Source of the DNA: Mytilus edulis
Taxonomy: Eukaryota
NCBI RefSeq assembly: GCF_963676685.1
Contig: NC_092355.1
Coordinates: 31,186,001-31,250,000, forward strand
DNA length: 64,000 nucleotides
Direction: 5' to 3'
Shown here: positions 32,218 through 63,686 of the stretch, piece after piece
Layout of the letters: each line of letters opens with the position of its first letter
Position numbering within the stretch: the stretch's first letter is position 1
Made by a program: the position numbers and the translations under genes
Notes under the pieces: model-generated
The model's database searches: none
Seen by the model: the letters and a program-made list of their open reading frames with translations, nothing else
What the model was told of the DNA's origin: nothing

Positions 32218-33803
32218 GGCCACACCAATTTGATTCCTTGTTCGACGGACCCGCCCGCACCTATTTTTTTCAAAACAGAATATTTTTATTCCCGCTTCCC
32301 GCATCCGGAAATGTAATCATGTCCATTTCCCGCACCGTTTTTTTTTTGTAGATATTATAAAAAGATATCAACATTTGTTTTAAAATCACAGTCTAACCTG
32401 TATATAACGATTTTAAACATAAAAGCACCCCACCACACTGTGTAAATATCTGTGAGAATATTTGTTTTAGCATGAAACCTATTTATCAAAAGTGAAAGTG
32501 CTCCGATGTAAATTTACAACAGCGGGAATACCTGTAAAGAACAAAAAAATGGTTTCTTTCCCACTTACTTATATTCCCTATCAAAACATGTTCGTTGTTA
32601 GAATAAACGATAAAGTACAAAGAACTTCTGAAGGATTTGCCCTCAACTGCAATTCTATTGTATGCTGGCGAAGCAAACTATCCATAGCCGCTGCATGTTT
32701 ATGCACCTGTCCTGATTGATTCAGGGACCTGTCGTTCAGCAGTTATCATTTGTTGATGTGGTTCATTGGTATTTTCTGGTTCGGATATATAAATTAGATC
32801 GTTGGTTTTCCTGTTCGAATTGTGTACGCTAATAATTTTGGGGTCCTTTTTAGCTTGCTGTTTGGTAGCCCTGTGTAAAACGCCGTACTTTGACCTTTGT
32901 TTGTTATTATCAGGTTGAGAACAATCCTCCCTCAGACAAGGGGTCATTTTACTGATGTAGAAAAGAAAATAGAAATACCAAGGATTTGTATAGTTCTTCT
33001 ATACAAAACCTTTGAAAACTTAGAATTTTGTACTCAAAAAGAGGAAAGTTACATCATATGTTAAACAACTTTTTCTAAAAGAGGGGTCCACTTATTTTGA
33101 ATAATATTAAACTGTTAAAGTAAATATCAGTGGCGGATCCAGAAATTTTCATAAGTGGGGGCCCACTGACTGCCTAAGAGGGGGCCCGCTCCAGTCACGC
33201 TTCAGTGATTCCCTATATAAGCAACCAAATTTTTTCCAAAAAAGGAGGGCCCGGGCCCCCTGCCCCCCCCCCCCCTAAATCCGCCTCTGAATATGTTAAC
33301 ATGGTTAAAGTCCAGGAATATTACAAAAATTCTTGGACATGTTTTGACCATTTAATATCAGATAGTTCTATGAGAAAATATGAGCCCTTTTGTACAAACA
33401 AATATATCATATTTTATATTGATCCCTCATAAAACATGTAAAAGGGATATTTATAACATTAAGTGGTTGCCCCAAAACTGATTATGACTTGGATTGAGAA
33501 TTGTCTCATTGTCAGTTACACATACATAGACCAGATTTAATTATTTCTTGGTGAACAGGGAAAAAATACTTCAGAAATTAAAGAAATGTCAAAGTACAAG
33601 TGATAAATCAAGTTTTAATATTGTCAAAACCTACTATTTTATGTTTACAAAAAAAAATTATAATCGCTCGCCTTTACTTTTGAAGCTTCGCCTCAAAAAT
33701 TTTTAAATTAAATATTTTTTTTATTAAAATTCTCAAATCGCTCGCTCGCCCCAAATTTTGGAGTCCAAAAATCCGTAGAACAGGAAATTAAATTGGTGTG
33801 GCC
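32218..33803. mobile_element. Non-autonomous PIF/Harbinger-type element
   Basis: Imperfect ~30-bp TIRs GGCCACACCAATTT...AAATTGGTGTGGCC with a 3-bp TAA TSD (32215-32217 and 33804-33806). It splits a retrozyme-type repeat. Confidence 0.8.
33128..33289. mobile_element. MITE nested in the Harbinger-type element
   Basis: TIR CAGTGGCGGATCCAG / CTAAATCCGCCTCTG with a 5-bp AATAT duplication. Confidence 0.8.
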
Positions 33804-33876
33804 TAAGAAAATCTATTTCTGGTGTATAATATTCATAATACTTGTATATATATATATCATATATATATATATATAT

Positions 33877-34676
33877 ACTCAGACGTACTTATGAATATAA
33901 TTATTTTCTGTGACTGTATCTTACATTAATTTGTAGGATCCTTTACTATAGATAATTTAGCTGATCTGTAACAATAACATCTTCATGCCTTATATATCAT
34001 GTACTGTAGTACGCCGCTAGATTAAAACTGACGTGGAAAGGTAACACATGCCCACCGAAAGCTCTTTTTTGAGAGCCCAGGTGGTCGTGTGGTCTAGCGG
34101 GACGGCTGCAGTGCAGGCGATTTGGTGTCACGATATCACAGTAGCATGGGTTCGAATCCCGGCGAGGGAAGAACCAAAAATTTGCGAAAGCAAATTTACA
34201 GATCTAACATTGTTGGGTTGATGTTTAGACGAGTTGTATATACATTATGTACACAGCCATGTATCACCATCATTGATGGCGATCCGATGGATACGTCTGT
34301 TGTAGGGTTGTCACTGACTCAGACGTACTTATGAATATAATTATTTTCTGTGACTGTATCTTACATTAATTTGTAGGATCCTTTACTATAGATAATTTAG
34401 CTGATCTGTAACAATAACATCTTCATGCCTTATATATCATGTACTGTAGTACGCCGCTAGATTAAAACTGACGTGGAAAGGTAACATATGCCCACCGAAA
34501 GCTCTTTTTTGAGAGCCCAGGTGGTCGTGTGGTCTAGCGGGACGGCTGCAGTGCAGGCGATTTGGTGTCACGATATCACAGTAGCATGGGTTCGAATCCC
34601 GGCGAGGGAAGAACCAAAAATTTGCGAAAGCAAATTTACAGATCTAACATTGTTGGGTTGATGTTTAGACGAGTTG
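33877..34676 (+). repeat. Tandem array (1.8 units, 440-bp period) of a Pol III-type structured-RNA retroelement in a (TA)n tract
   Basis: Near-identical direct repeats at offset 440; A box 34082-34092, B box 34149-34159, T6 runs at 34065-34070 and 34505-34510; (TA)n on both flanks. Confidence 0.85.
34071..34510 (+). ncRNA. Predicted 440-nt Pol III transcript with base-paired 5' and 3' ends
   Basis: G start 11 nt before the A box. The only T-run of 5 or more in the unit is at its end. The 5' ~45 nt are complementary to the 3' ~70 nt, and there are several internal hairpins. Confidence 0.5.
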
Positions 34677-35588
34677 TATATATGATATATATATATACAA
34701 GTATATATATATATATTTATCATTCAGGTCATACATATTGGTCTGAAGATAATGTTCACCAGCAATATGTATATGAACAACTTGTAAATATAATCGGAAA
34801 GGAAACAGATTTACAGCGGTTATTTTTGGTACAAGATGTGATTAATTGGGTCAGGATTAACATACATATCAAGTGGAAGTTTAGCTGAAGGTTTGAGTTT
34901 ACCTGGCAGTGATCTTGATATCATGTACGTTTTACACGGTATTAAAGTCGTCAATAGGGAACAGGATATACCAATTCCAAATGAATTTGCAACACTGTTG
35001 ATGGAGATAAACCCTAATCATCTAGGATTTAGCAGACTTAAATTAGCTGAAGGTTTCGAGACATCTAGTCCACTTCTTTAAAAAATGGTTACAAAAACCG
35101 ACGAAGGTTTATACCTAGAACCCCATGAATTCATTTCAATTTTTCAACAACATACAATACCTACATGGCCCATGTGTTTCAGATAAATGTATGGCTTTGA
35201 ATATAGCAGTTGTTTCCGAAATAAATCACTTCCCTTACTATGTAAAACAATGGGTTTGTCGACAAAGAAAACAATGGCCGCCGAATGCAGTTATTGATAC
35301 CATATATATAATGAGATTTGGATGTTTGCTGGTACCAATCGGACCTAAAACGATGACAAATAATCAGTTTCTATGGAAATTATCATTTTCAGTTGCAGAA
35401 AAACAACTTTTACACCCAACTATTATGCTACGGTCTACTTAAATTAACATTGAAACACATCATAATCAAAAAGCCAGGTGAAGAGGATTTGTTATGTTCA
35501 TATTTTCTAAAAACAACGTTGTTTTGGTTGTCAGAGGAAGCATCCATCTAGACATTTCAATTACAAAACTATTTCACTTTTAAAAATT

Positions 35589-62499: not shown

Positions 62500-63068
62500 A
62501 GTGCAGGCGATTCGGTGTCACGATATCACAGTAGCATGGGTTCGAATCCCGGCGAGGGAAGAACCAAAAATTTGCGAAAGCAAATTTACAGATCTAACAT
62601 TGTTGGGTTGATGTTTAGACGAGTTGTATATACATTATGTACACACCCATGTATCACCATCATTGATGGCGATCCGATGGATACATCTGTTGTATAGTTG
62701 TCACTGACTCAGACGTACTTATAAATATAATTATTTTCTGTGACTGTATATTACATTAATTTGTAGGATCCTTTACTATAGATAATTTAGCTGATCTGTA
62801 ACAATAACATCTTCATGCCTTATATATCATGTACTGTAGTACGCCGCTAGATTAAAACTGACGAGGAAAGGTAACACACGGCCAGCGAAAGCTCTATTTT
62901 TGTAGAGCCCAGGTGGTCGTGTGGTCTAGCGGGACGGCTGCAGTGCAGGCGATTCGGTGTCACGATATCACAGTAGCATGGGTTCGAATCCCGACGAGGG
63001 AAGAACCAAAAATTTGCGAAAGCAAATTTACAGATCTAACATTGTTGGGTTGATGTTTAGACGAGTTG
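62500..63068 (+). repeat. Second tandem array (1.3 units, 442-bp period) of the Pol III-type retroelement
   Basis: Same family as 33877-34676 and the same 3' end GACGAGTTG(TA)n, with a different 5' truncation. Confidence 0.85.
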
Positions 63069-63686
63069 TATATATATATATATAATATATATATACATGT
63101 ATTATAAAGAATAAGAGAATGAATTTGTTGAATGTCACAAGCCCTAAAGCATTGTCGTTTACTTCAATTTCTATTTCATATGTTGTTCCTTCTTTAACAT
63201 TTGAAATATGTGGGGCCTCTTTCTATTCTTTTGATTTCAATTCTTCTCTTTTAAATTCTTTGTTTTCTGGTTATCTCTTTGCCTCTCCAATTTCTTATTC
63301 ATACTTTCCCAAACATTCGGCGTAAATTTTCCTCGGGAACGTTCTGATGCCTCATTTACCTGAAAGTTTTATTTATTTATTTGTAATGAAAAGGTGTAAT
63401 ATATATTACAGTGCAAAATTAATCCAATCATGCATTAAAACATCAATTTAAAAATATTTTATACCTGACTAACAAAGGCACTCATTAAGCGTTTAACATC
63501 ATAATGTGATATATGGCCAGGTTTATTAAGTGATTGCAATAATTAGGTCATCTGGTGATGGGTATGCAATTTTATATTGATTCTGCATATGATGTACATC
63601 CTTTTTAGTGTTTTTTTTTTATATACAATGGCAAAGTTATCTAAATGTGAAAAATGTTCATGCCCATGTTCATTTTTATCTTTCAG

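What the first reader, a model, noticed from the sequence alone, without database searches (positions are those of the whole stretch)
33877..34676. Spacer-less tandem Pol III unit: candidate circular-RNA retroelement without a recognisable ribozyme
Seen: (1) the 440-bp unit has A and B boxes. (2) Its only T-run of 5 or more directly abuts the G 11 nt upstream of the A box (GCTCTTTTTT|GAGAGCCC), leaving no untranscribed spacer. (3) Both arrays end at the same internal point, GACGAGTTG|TATATA, where the unit itself contains TATATA, and both sit in (TA)n tracts. (4) The 5' ends are variably truncated. (5) This array crosses the terminator/start junction twice. (6) Array-specific variants are shared within an array (GATTTGG here, GATTCGG at 62.5 kb). 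Inference: a unit-length Pol III transcript is ligated end to end, or template-jumped, then primed at its internal UAUAUA by a nicked (TA)n target and reverse transcribed for more than one turn. This would resemble retrozymes but use Pol III start and termination instead of a hammerhead to define monomers. Caveats: there is an internal T4 at 34344-34347, and PLE-style pseudo-LTR formation or local duplication could give a similar pattern.
Basis: partly seen in the sequence, partly recalled or inferred. Interest (0 to 1): 0.85.

Follow-up and report, generated by a model that had tools for sequence, protein, structure and literature searches.

The report
tRNA-headed tandem retroposon in (TA)n
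This stretch is a 1.8-unit insertion of a young, heavily transcribed, non-coding 440-base mobile element of a mussel genome that copies itself into TA-repeats as head-to-tail strings, in the style of Penelope-like retroelements, and whose units are not set by RNA polymerase III start and stop sites as first proposed.

Summary
Window 33877-34676 is 1.8 head-to-tail copies of a 440-bp unit, and 62500-63068 is 1.3 copies. Both end at GACGAGTTG|TATATA inside (TA)n.

Genome-wide there are at least 195 matches of 87-100% identity (most 98-100%). I examined 53 array segments.
- 35 of 51 3' ends lie at that same point, and 8 lie in a second TA-rich zone.
- 5' ends are spread evenly round the unit.
- Units within an array are clonal.
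- Nine loci are head-to-head inverted pairs.

This fits target-primed reverse transcription. A nicked (TA)n anneals to an internal UAUAUA of a circular or multimeric RNA, and copying goes more than once round. The genome holds abundant Penelope-like elements (PLEs) that target (TA)n and make the same shapes. They are the likeliest enzyme source.

- The T-run is the loop of a covarying hairpin.
- Lineages without T4 at the junction still spread.
- Abundant strand-biased RNA crosses the T-run at near-full depth.
- The only discrete RNA end lies at unit 407/408.

No known ribozyme matches. Older copies carry a hammerhead-like core without helices I and II.

Earlier follow-ups of this scan, on other DNA of this genome, reached the same class. 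I rate it a new variant of a known kind.

The parts
33845..33876 (.). (TA)n tract at the 5' side of array A (target)
   Evidence: TRF; sequence
33877..34070 (+). 5'-truncated first unit (unit positions about 247-440)
   Evidence: BLAST to the unit
34071..34510 (+). One complete 440-bp unit in the register used here (position 1 = G after the T-run)
34511..34676 (+). 3' partial unit (unit 1-166), ending GACGAGTTG at the family's fixed 3' end
   Evidence: 35 of 51 ends at this point
34677..34720 (.). (TA)n at the 3' side. Its first TATATA cannot be told from unit 167-172 (microhomology at the priming site).
34237..34242 (+). Internal UAUAUA (unit 167-172), the main inferred priming site
34321..34339 (+). 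Secondary 3'-end zone (unit 251-269, ...GACGTACTTATGAATATA). It is used by 8 of 51 ends, mostly the second arm of inverted pairs.
34090..34100 (+). Box A-like motif (repeated at 34530-34540). In the RNA it is the 3' strand of the long stem.
34149..34159 (+). Box B motif / T-arm-like hairpin (repeated at 34589-34599)
34061..34076 (+). Hairpin GCUCU / U-rich loop / AGAGC that holds the T6 (again at 34501-34516), at the tip of the long stem
   Evidence: 97.5% of cells paired, compensatory changes
34014..34115 (+). Long conserved stem domain (helices S0-S3) spanning the unit junction (second copy 34454-34555)
34470..34485 (+). Conserved unpaired motif GACGUGGAAAGGUAAC bulging from the stem. Read starts pile up at 34477/34478 (unit 407/408). 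The equivalent place in the first copy is 34037/34038.
62500..63068 (+). Array B: 1.3 units of an older subfamily (unit 40-440, then 1-166), same 3' end, with a hammerhead-like CUGACGAG box
63069..63106 (.). (TA)n at the 3' side of array B

Best explanation
Array A is one insertion of a non-coding, tRNA-headed, 440/441-nt retroelement family of a mussel genome. Earlier scan notes call the genome blue mussel; I did not verify that. The element is transcribed abundantly from one strand, most likely the tRNA-sense strand, as RNA that is continuous from unit to unit. The RNA folds into a rod with a long covarying stem. A new copy arises by target-primed reverse transcription. An endonuclease nicks a (TA)n tract. 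The TA 3' end anneals to the internal UAUAUA just after a hairpin at unit 130-160. The reverse transcriptase then runs round a circular or concatemeric template once to many times and stops at a random point. This gives a fixed 3' end, a random 5' end and clonal units. Priming from the second target strand gives head-to-head inverted arrays. The enzymes most likely come from the (TA)n-targeting Penelope-like elements that are abundant and recently active in the same genome. Pol III start and stop do not delimit the unit, and the T-run is a hairpin loop. Shown here: the copy anatomy, the covarying RNA fold, strand-biased RNA that crosses the junction, and co-resident (TA)n-targeting PLEs with the same shapes. 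Inferred: RNA-mediated copying, the PLE as enzyme donor, the template topology, and which polymerase makes the RNA.
For:: at least 195 matches on all large contigs, most of them 98-100% identical; of 51 3' ends, 35 lie at unit 167 and 8 at unit 251-269; (TA)4 or more spans the junction in 38 of those 43. The 5' ends are uniform (KS p=0.23), with no pile at unit 1 or 408. Sizes run from 0.08 to 14.5 units; arrays of 8, 9, 3, 3, 3, 3, 2 and 2 identical units; the within-array median is 0 substitutions, against a between-array mean of 6.1; the junction T-run is constant within most arrays and differs between arrays, and both arms of inverted pairs share their variant. Segmental duplicates keep the same unit number (L037/L040, L054/L060); nine head-to-head pairs with both outer ends in (TA)n; at least 858 GIY-YIG candidates, and one C-terminal-endonuclease PLE family ends directly at (TA)n in 9 of 9 copies. 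By eye, about 18 head-to-head against 2 tail-to-tail close pairs among the 150 listed hits. (PMC8557442): PLEs form partial tandems and inverted 5'-truncated copies; Naiads prefer (TA)n and lack hammerheads. RNA depth of 1000-2200 from 6% of a run, with a 20-50:1 strand bias. Reads cross the T-run (826 and 1121 deep), and two thirds carry T7 as in the DNA. Only 3-5% of reads at unit 172 run out into (TA)n, against about one in five of such sites in the sampled DNA. A 471-nt RNA contig equals 441+30, a closed cycle; a second family (475-bp unit, about 70% identity in the head) has the same build and the same (TA)n ends.
Against: No enzyme link is shown. The 3' ends of the PLE family and the Naiad copy that I read share no sequence with the unit. 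An earlier first-reader note, untested here, describes a LINE fused to 1.5 units, so a (TA)n-specific LINE could be the donor. RNA-mediated copying is inferred from shapes only; no target-site duplication can be read inside (TA)n. The sampled arrays came from the best BLAST hits, so long arrays are over-represented. The RNA strand rests on the usual library convention, which I could not calibrate. The conserved A and B boxes suggest some Pol III role that I cannot exclude.
Confidence: 0.7

Rival explanations
1. First reader's model. Pol III starts at the G after the T-run and stops in the next T-run. The unit-length RNA is ligated end to end (or the RT jumps from its 5' end to a 3' end) and is then copied by rolling circle.
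For: The A and B boxes are conserved in both families. The predicted 5' and 3' ends would pair as GAGAGC/GCUCUU, which would bring them together.
Against: No molecule ends were listed at 34070/71 or 34510/11, and depth is nearly unbroken there. The RNA T-run has the same T6/T7 length as the DNA, not a shortened one. TTTATT and TTATT lineages still form 3-4-unit arrays. The hairpin stem covaries while the loop only stays U-rich. 5' ends are not enriched at unit 1. There are no non-templated letters at the junctions.
Confidence: 0.1
2. Retrozyme-like cycle with an unrecognised processing site. Concatemeric transcripts are cut at unit 407/408, in the conserved GUGGAAAGGUAAC bulge, by a new self-cleaving motif or a host endonuclease. 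The monomers are ligated to 441-nt circles, which are the template for rolling-circle reverse transcription.
For: About half of the molecules end exactly at 34477/34478 (259+190 of depth 837; 301 of 903). The site lies in a motif invariant across subfamilies and family 2. The RNA contig is cyclic and few reads exit into flanks. The fold is rod-like, with z=-5.7 against shuffles. 5' ends are uniform and junctions scar-free.
Against: No matching pile of 5' ends was listed. No Rfam ribozyme matches at E up to 10. GGA/GAA is not a hammerhead NUH site. Tandem DNA alone explains junction-crossing reads and the cyclic contig. The pile could be a fragmentation hot spot, or a 5' end of the other strand if the library convention differs.
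Confidence: 0.25
3. The enzyme donor is a (TA)n-specific LINE rather than a Penelope-like element.
For: 5' truncation and twin-priming inversions are classic LINE signatures (established knowledge). An earlier first-reader note reports a full-length LINE in (TA)n fused to 1.5 units; I could not test it.
Against: Regular multi-unit tandems together with inverted copies are the PLE hallmark. (TA)n-targeting PLEs are demonstrably abundant here. I did not see a (TA)n-targeting LINE myself.
Confidence: 0.15
4. DNA-level origin: a satellite spread by unequal crossing-over, by extrachromosomal circles re-integrating at fragile (TA)n, or by Helitron-type rolling-circle transposition.
For: Tandem units and insertion at A/T steps are seen. 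(TA)n tracts are break-prone.
Against: Polarity is strict, with the fixed end always on the same strand and side. The termini are not Helitron-like. Unit number is stable in segmental duplicates. Arrays are clonal, on every large contig, with unrelated flanks. The RNA is abundant and strand-biased.
Confidence: 0.04

Closest known systems
Metazoan non-LTR retrozymes (Cervera & de la Pena 2020, PMC7229834; Cells 2020, PMC7761336)
   Same: Both are non-coding, AT-rich tandem units of a few hundred bp that are highly expressed as unit-continuous, strongly self-paired RNA. Both are thought to depend on PLEs and to be copied from circular RNA. Mussels carry them.
   Different: Retrozymes are defined by a type I hammerhead, and none is detectable here. 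The reviews state that retrozymes carry no promoter, whereas this unit has conserved A/B boxes. The unit is longer (440 against 350-390 bp in mussel). A circle is not shown.
Pseudo-LTR / tandem-inverted insertions of Penelope-like elements, especially Naiads (Craig et al. 2021, PMC8557442)
   Same: Shared features are the (TA)n insertion bias, 5' truncation, partial tandems, adjacent inverted 5'-truncated copies and the absence of a canonical hammerhead.
   Different: This element has no ORF and no sequence similarity to the PLE copies read here. It has many full turns instead of about 1.3 units, and it has a tRNA-derived head.
tRNA-derived SINEs, including tandem-like SINE arrays of bivalves (PMC11481361)
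   Same: Shared features are the tRNA-like head with A/B boxes, the 200-700 bp length, non-autonomy, and a 3' end in a microsatellite. Tandem and palindromic SINE structures are reported in Scapharca broughtonii.
   Different: SINEs insert as monomers delimited by Pol III start and by the LINE tail. Here the unit is permuted relative to the insertion ends. Arrays are born multi-unit, and RNA runs through the supposed terminator.
Plant LTR retrozymes (PMC4918200)
   Same: Both are non-autonomous elements thought to spread through small, structured, circular RNA.
   Different: Plant retrozymes have LTRs, a primer-binding site, a polypurine tract, type III hammerheads and Gypsy enzymes. None of these is present here.

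Membership tests
Non-LTR retrozyme | Type I hammerhead ribozyme in every unit | tested here: not met
   No Rfam hammerhead or other ribozyme matches at E up to 10 in arrays A and B or in an older copy. The young subfamily has CUGACGUG and AGAGCC, a broken core. Older copies have CUGA[U/C]GAG...CGAAA...UC but no helices I and II. No RNA end lies at the predicted cut.
Non-LTR retrozyme | Short, AT-rich, non-coding tandem units | tested here: met
   The unit is 440/441 bp with 41% GC. The longest open frame read circularly is 78 aa.
Non-LTR retrozyme | Accumulates as covalently closed circular RNA | tested here: inconclusive
   Reads cross the unit junction, the RNA contig is cyclic (441+30) and few reads exit into flanks. 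Tandem DNA templates can give the same picture.
tRNA-derived SINE | [quoted passage not shown] | tested here: met
   Both box motifs are present and conserved in family 2. ARAGORN and the Rfam tRNA model find no tRNA.
tRNA-derived SINE | Element delimited by the Pol III start at its 5' end, with full-length monomers predominant | tested here: not met
   5' ends are uniform round the unit, with no excess at unit 1. 44 of the 53 segments exceed one unit, and 28 reach two units or more.
tRNA-derived SINE | 3' tail shared with a partner LINE, or poly(A)/microsatellite | tested here: inconclusive
   The element ends in (TA)n, which is also the target. No partner with a similar 3' region was found among the loci read.
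Penelope-like element (autonomous) or its pseudo-LTR | RT plus GIY-YIG ORF, or sequence identity with the terminal region of such an element | tested here: not met
   The unit has no ORF. No shared upstream sequence exists among 51 junctions. There is no similarity to 20 PLE loci or to a 1053-aa Naiad copy beyond neighbouring insertions.
PLE-mobilised (works like) | (TA)n bias, 5' truncation, partial tandems and adjacent inverted 5'-truncated copy | tested here: met
   for the element. for PLEs of the same genome. for the published definition.
Helitron | 5' TC and 3' CTRR termini with a subterminal hairpin, inserted between A and T | tested here: not met
   The ends read ...CGAGTTG|TA and the 5' ends vary.

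The most novel reading that the evidence does not exclude
The element is a retrozyme-type circular-RNA retroelement that has replaced the hammerhead. It carries its own tRNA-type promoter. Its monomers are defined by a so far undescribed processing site (a new self-cleaving motif, or a host endonuclease plus ligase) at unit 407/408, in the invariant bulge of a covarying rod. The resulting 441-nt circle is copied by rolling-circle reverse transcription by a Penelope-like enzyme.
Probability: 0.2. Interest if true: 0.85.

Novelty: new variant of a known kind. Interest (0 to 1): 0.6.

Why it matters
How Penelope-like elements make their tandem and inverted copies is an open question; Craig et al. 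2021 call for an in-vitro system. A 441-nt passenger that is copied up to 14 times round gives far more informative junctions than a 4-kb element.

The passenger has a fixed microhomology-anchored 3' end, clonal units and paired inverted arms that use two different priming zones. It also shows that tandem, retrozyme-like spread does not need a working hammerhead. A tRNA-type promoter module can sit in such an element, although published retrozymes are described as promoterless.

If the discrete RNA end at unit 407/408 is a processing site, it points to a new way of making small circular RNAs in animals.

Tried and rejected
- Known RNA families. Rfam at gathering score on the whole window and at E up to 10 on both arrays and an older copy gave only chance-level hits. 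ARAGORN found no tRNA.
- Positive control for hammerheads. Rfam at gathering score on 18 loci, including PLE copies, found nothing. I therefore have no in-genome control for ribozyme detection.
- Hammerhead reading. The core letters exist in older copies, but helices I and II are missing, and the competing long stem is the one that covaries.
- Coding capacity. There is none.
- Helitron or DNA-satellite origin. Rejected on polarity and termini.
- Pseudo-LTR of a PLE. There is no similarity to 20 GIY-YIG loci or to a Naiad copy with its own 194-bp terminal repeat. The hits near PLEs are separate insertions into shared (TA)n.
- Minor-strand RNA over unit 20-175. I read this as background from many short 5'-truncated copies inside host transcripts, not as a separate Pol III RNA (run X24: 66% of what was laid runs on into unlike sequence).
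- More copies of family 2, or the reported LINE chimera.
- Pfam on the ORF beside array A. Only a sub-threshold nucleotidyltransferase hit.

Full report
**What is at the coordinates.** Window 33877-34676 holds 1.8 head-to-tail copies of a 440-bp unit.
- I use the register where unit position 1 is the G at 34071 and position 440 is the last T of the T6 at 34510.
- The array starts at unit 247, directly after a (TA)16 tract.
- It crosses the T-run/G junction at 34070/71 and at 34510/11.
- It stops after GACGAGTTG (34676, unit 166), where the unit's own TATATA merges into a (TA)n tract.
- A second array (62500-63068) starts at unit 40 and stops at the same point.
- The unit has a box A-like TGGTCTAGCGG at unit 20, a box B GGTTCGAATCC at unit 79, one T6 (unit 435-440) and one T4 (unit 274).
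- ARAGORN and Rfam see no tRNA and no other RNA family, even at E up to 10.

**Genome-wide anatomy.**
- The window's genome has 1.37 Gb and 14 large contigs. Earlier scan notes call it blue mussel.
- It holds at least 195 matches to the unit, most of them 98-100% identical, on all large contigs.
- I cut out 36 loci and chained the hits, together with the two window arrays, into 53 array segments.
- Of 51 readable 3' ends, 35 lie at unit 167. Eight lie in a second zone (unit 251-269, ...GACGTACTTATGAATATA). Eight lie elsewhere, mostly inner ends of rearranged copies.
- A (TA)4 or longer tract spans the junction in 31 of the 35 and in 7 of the 8.
- The longer TATATAT at unit 361 is never used as a 3' end. 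TA microhomology alone therefore does not choose the site. The hairpin just upstream of unit 167 probably contributes.
- The 51 5' ends fit a uniform spread round the unit (KS p=0.23), with no excess at unit 1 or at unit 408.
- Sizes run from 0.08 to 14.5 units (median 2.2).
- The sample is biased toward long arrays, because it came from the best BLAST hits.

**Units are clonal and junctions are clean.**
- Units of one array differ by a median of 0 substitutions.
- Eight arrays, of 8, 9, 3, 3, 3, 3, 2 and 2 units, are internally identical. Units of different arrays differ by 6.1 per 440 on average.
- The junction reads T6 to T9, or an interrupted run. It is constant within most arrays, with occasional differences of one T.
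- No extra letters occur at junctions.
- Segmental duplicates keep the same unit number (L037/L040, L054/L060). Arrays therefore do not grow quickly after insertion.
- A few arrays mix units that differ by 7-10 substitutions (L050, L056, L063). This suggests occasional template switching or recombination.
- Together with the uniform 5' ends, this points to a template without fixed ends: a circle or a long homogeneous concatemer.

**Inverted pairs and the Penelope-like context.**
- Nine loci are head-to-head pairs. Both outer ends are 3' ends in (TA)n, and both arms carry the same variant.
- In most pairs one arm ends at unit 167 and the other at unit 251-269.
- Several (TA)n tracts were hit repeatedly (L035, L042, L056).
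- This is the copy geometry published for Penelope-like elements (PLEs): 5' truncation, partial tandems, an adjacent inverted 5'-truncated copy, and a (TA)n bias in Naiads, which also lack hammerheads (PMC8557442).
- The genome has at least 858 GIY-YIG candidates.
- By eye, the 150 listed hits include about 18 close head-to-head pairs against 2 tail-to-tail pairs.
- One near-identical C-terminal-endonuclease family ends directly at (TA)n in 9 of 9 copies read.
- Four of 20 random PLE loci had copies of the unit beside them, in shared TA tracts.
- I found no sequence link between the unit and these PLEs or a 1053-aa Naiad copy. The enzyme donor is therefore inferred, not shown.

**RNA structure.**
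- The most common natural unit, folded as a circle, has -137 kcal/mol against -105 +/- 5.6 for shuffles (z=-5.7).
- The T-run is the loop of a hairpin (GCUCU/AGAGC) at the tip of a long stem.
- In that stem the box A region pairs with CCGCUAGAU about 60 nt before the junction.
- Subfamilies replace the hairpin stem by GCUCUA/UAGAGC, GCUU(U)A/UGAAGC or GCUUCAU/AUGAAGC.
- A second family (475-bp unit, also tandem and in (TA)n) has GUUAUA/UAUAGC in that place.
- On a 15-row alignment, 91.6% of cells pair, against 24-45% when the partners are slid. Five pairs change on both sides, and none of 500 shuffles reaches the observed covariation score.
- One caveat applies to that count: the structure was derived from one of the rows.
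- The loop stays U-rich but not T4 or longer. TTTATT (L043, four junctions, and L042 on another contig) and TTATT (L074, three units) lineages still formed arrays.
- A 20-nt bulge holds the motif GUGNNAAGGUAAC, with AAGGUAAC invariant in all rows.

**RNA reads.**
- Two stranded raw-read runs of the same species label cover the unit 1000-2200 deep from 6% of each run.
- The strand bias is 20-50:1. The first mate lies on the minus strand, so the RNA is plus sense under the usual convention.
- Reads cross the T-run at 826 and 1121 deep, and two thirds carry T7, the commonest DNA length.
- Summed over both copies, depth at the junction is about half of the maximum and 70-80% of the depth over unit 1-250.
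- No molecule ends were listed at 34070/71 or 34510/11.
- The one strong pile of read starts is at 34477/34478: 259+190 of depth 837 in one run, and 301 of 903 in the other. That is unit 407/408, inside the invariant bulge.
- Only 35 and 67 reads run from unit 172 into (TA)n, which is 3-5% of depth. About one in five such sites is an array end in the sampled DNA.
- A fish-gut metatranscriptome holds a 471-nt contig at depth 171. That length is the 441-nt unit plus 30, a closed cycle in a 31-mer graph.
- The element is therefore expressed as unit-continuous RNA. Circle or concatemer cannot be told apart from these data.

**Ribozyme question.**
- The young, expressed subfamily has CUGACGUG and AGAGCC.
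- Older copies (array B, L017/L035, L042, L066, L074) have CUGA[U/C]GAG, CGAAA, a good helix III, and in L017/L035 a UC at the cut position.
- That amounts to a complete hammerhead core. However, helices I and II are absent, no Rfam model matches, and the covarying stem competes with that fold.
- I read it as a look-alike or a decayed relic.
- The plus-strand site 407/408 (GGA/GAA) does not obey the hammerhead NUH rule.

**Mechanism and verdict.**
- Best supported (0.7): a non-autonomous retroelement copied by target-primed reverse transcription from an end-less RNA template into (TA)n. The enzymes are most likely PLE enzymes.
- A retrozyme-like cycle with a new processing site at 407/408 remains open (0.25).
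- A LINE donor is possible (0.15).
- A DNA-level origin is unlikely (0.04).

**Comparison with what is known.**
- The element works like a non-LTR retrozyme and like a PLE pseudo-LTR.
- It fails the defining test of each: it has no hammerhead and no ORF or identity to a PLE.
- It also fails the SINE test of a Pol III-defined 5' end.
- I found no description of such an element in the held literature.
- Published reviews state that retrozymes lack promoters (PMC7761336).
- Earlier follow-ups of this scan, on other DNA of the same genome, reached the same class: a tRNA-headed, Penelope-style tandem retroposon whose units are not set by Pol III, with a doubtful hammerhead. My reading was formed before I saw them and agrees with them.

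**Limits.**
- Only one reads call was allowed, and the library strand convention is not calibrated.
- The list of molecule ends was truncated.

Noticed in passing
window:61632-62501: An 870-bp foldback / MITE-like element has 31-nt terminal inverted repeats (97% complementary) and subterminal 19-bp tandem repeats (CTAAAGTGCGATGGTCACG). Both of its ends are in TATATA, and it abuts the 5' end of array B. The same TA tract was therefore hit by two kinds of element.
   Followed up: partly
L080:1978-2370 (minus strand); L082:2200-2600 (minus strand); arrays listed: A sister family has a 475-bp unit and at least 652 first-look candidates. It is also tandem and ends in (TA)n. It has the same stem/hairpin/tRNA-head build but only about 70% identity in the head. 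In L080 and L082 it lies tail-to-tail with a PLE across an identical (TA)11, which suggests that this composite was itself copied.
   Followed up: partly
L078-L086, about 190 bp after the ORF stop: A near-identical C-terminal GIY-YIG PLE family ends ...GTGTATTTAATTTTTAA directly at (TA)n in 9 of 9 copies. Many PLE hits are close head-to-head pairs.
   Followed up: partly
window:34745-35080 and window:63700-63998: Both arrays lie just upstream of paralogous coding stretches (...LPGSDLDIMY...) with a weak, sub-threshold nucleotidyltransferase-fold hit. This is a tandemly duplicated gene family whose (TA)n tracts were hit independently.
   Followed up: partly
window:33700-33816: The stretch left of array A is another multi-copy repeat. 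It is transcribed mostly from the opposite read direction (depth 100-150). Every read differs from the window copy at 33732 and 33783 and by a one-base deletion at 33715, so the RNA comes from other copies.
   Followed up: no
L041:489-1548: One head-to-head pair has identical flanks in inverted orientation on both sides. It is either a true palindrome (snap-back copying) or an assembly artefact.
   Followed up: no
run X12 (fish-gut metatranscriptome): The mussel element's RNA is present at depth 171 as a clean cyclic contig in fish-gut RNA. This would fit an unusually stable RNA, but DNA carry-over is not excluded.
   Followed up: no
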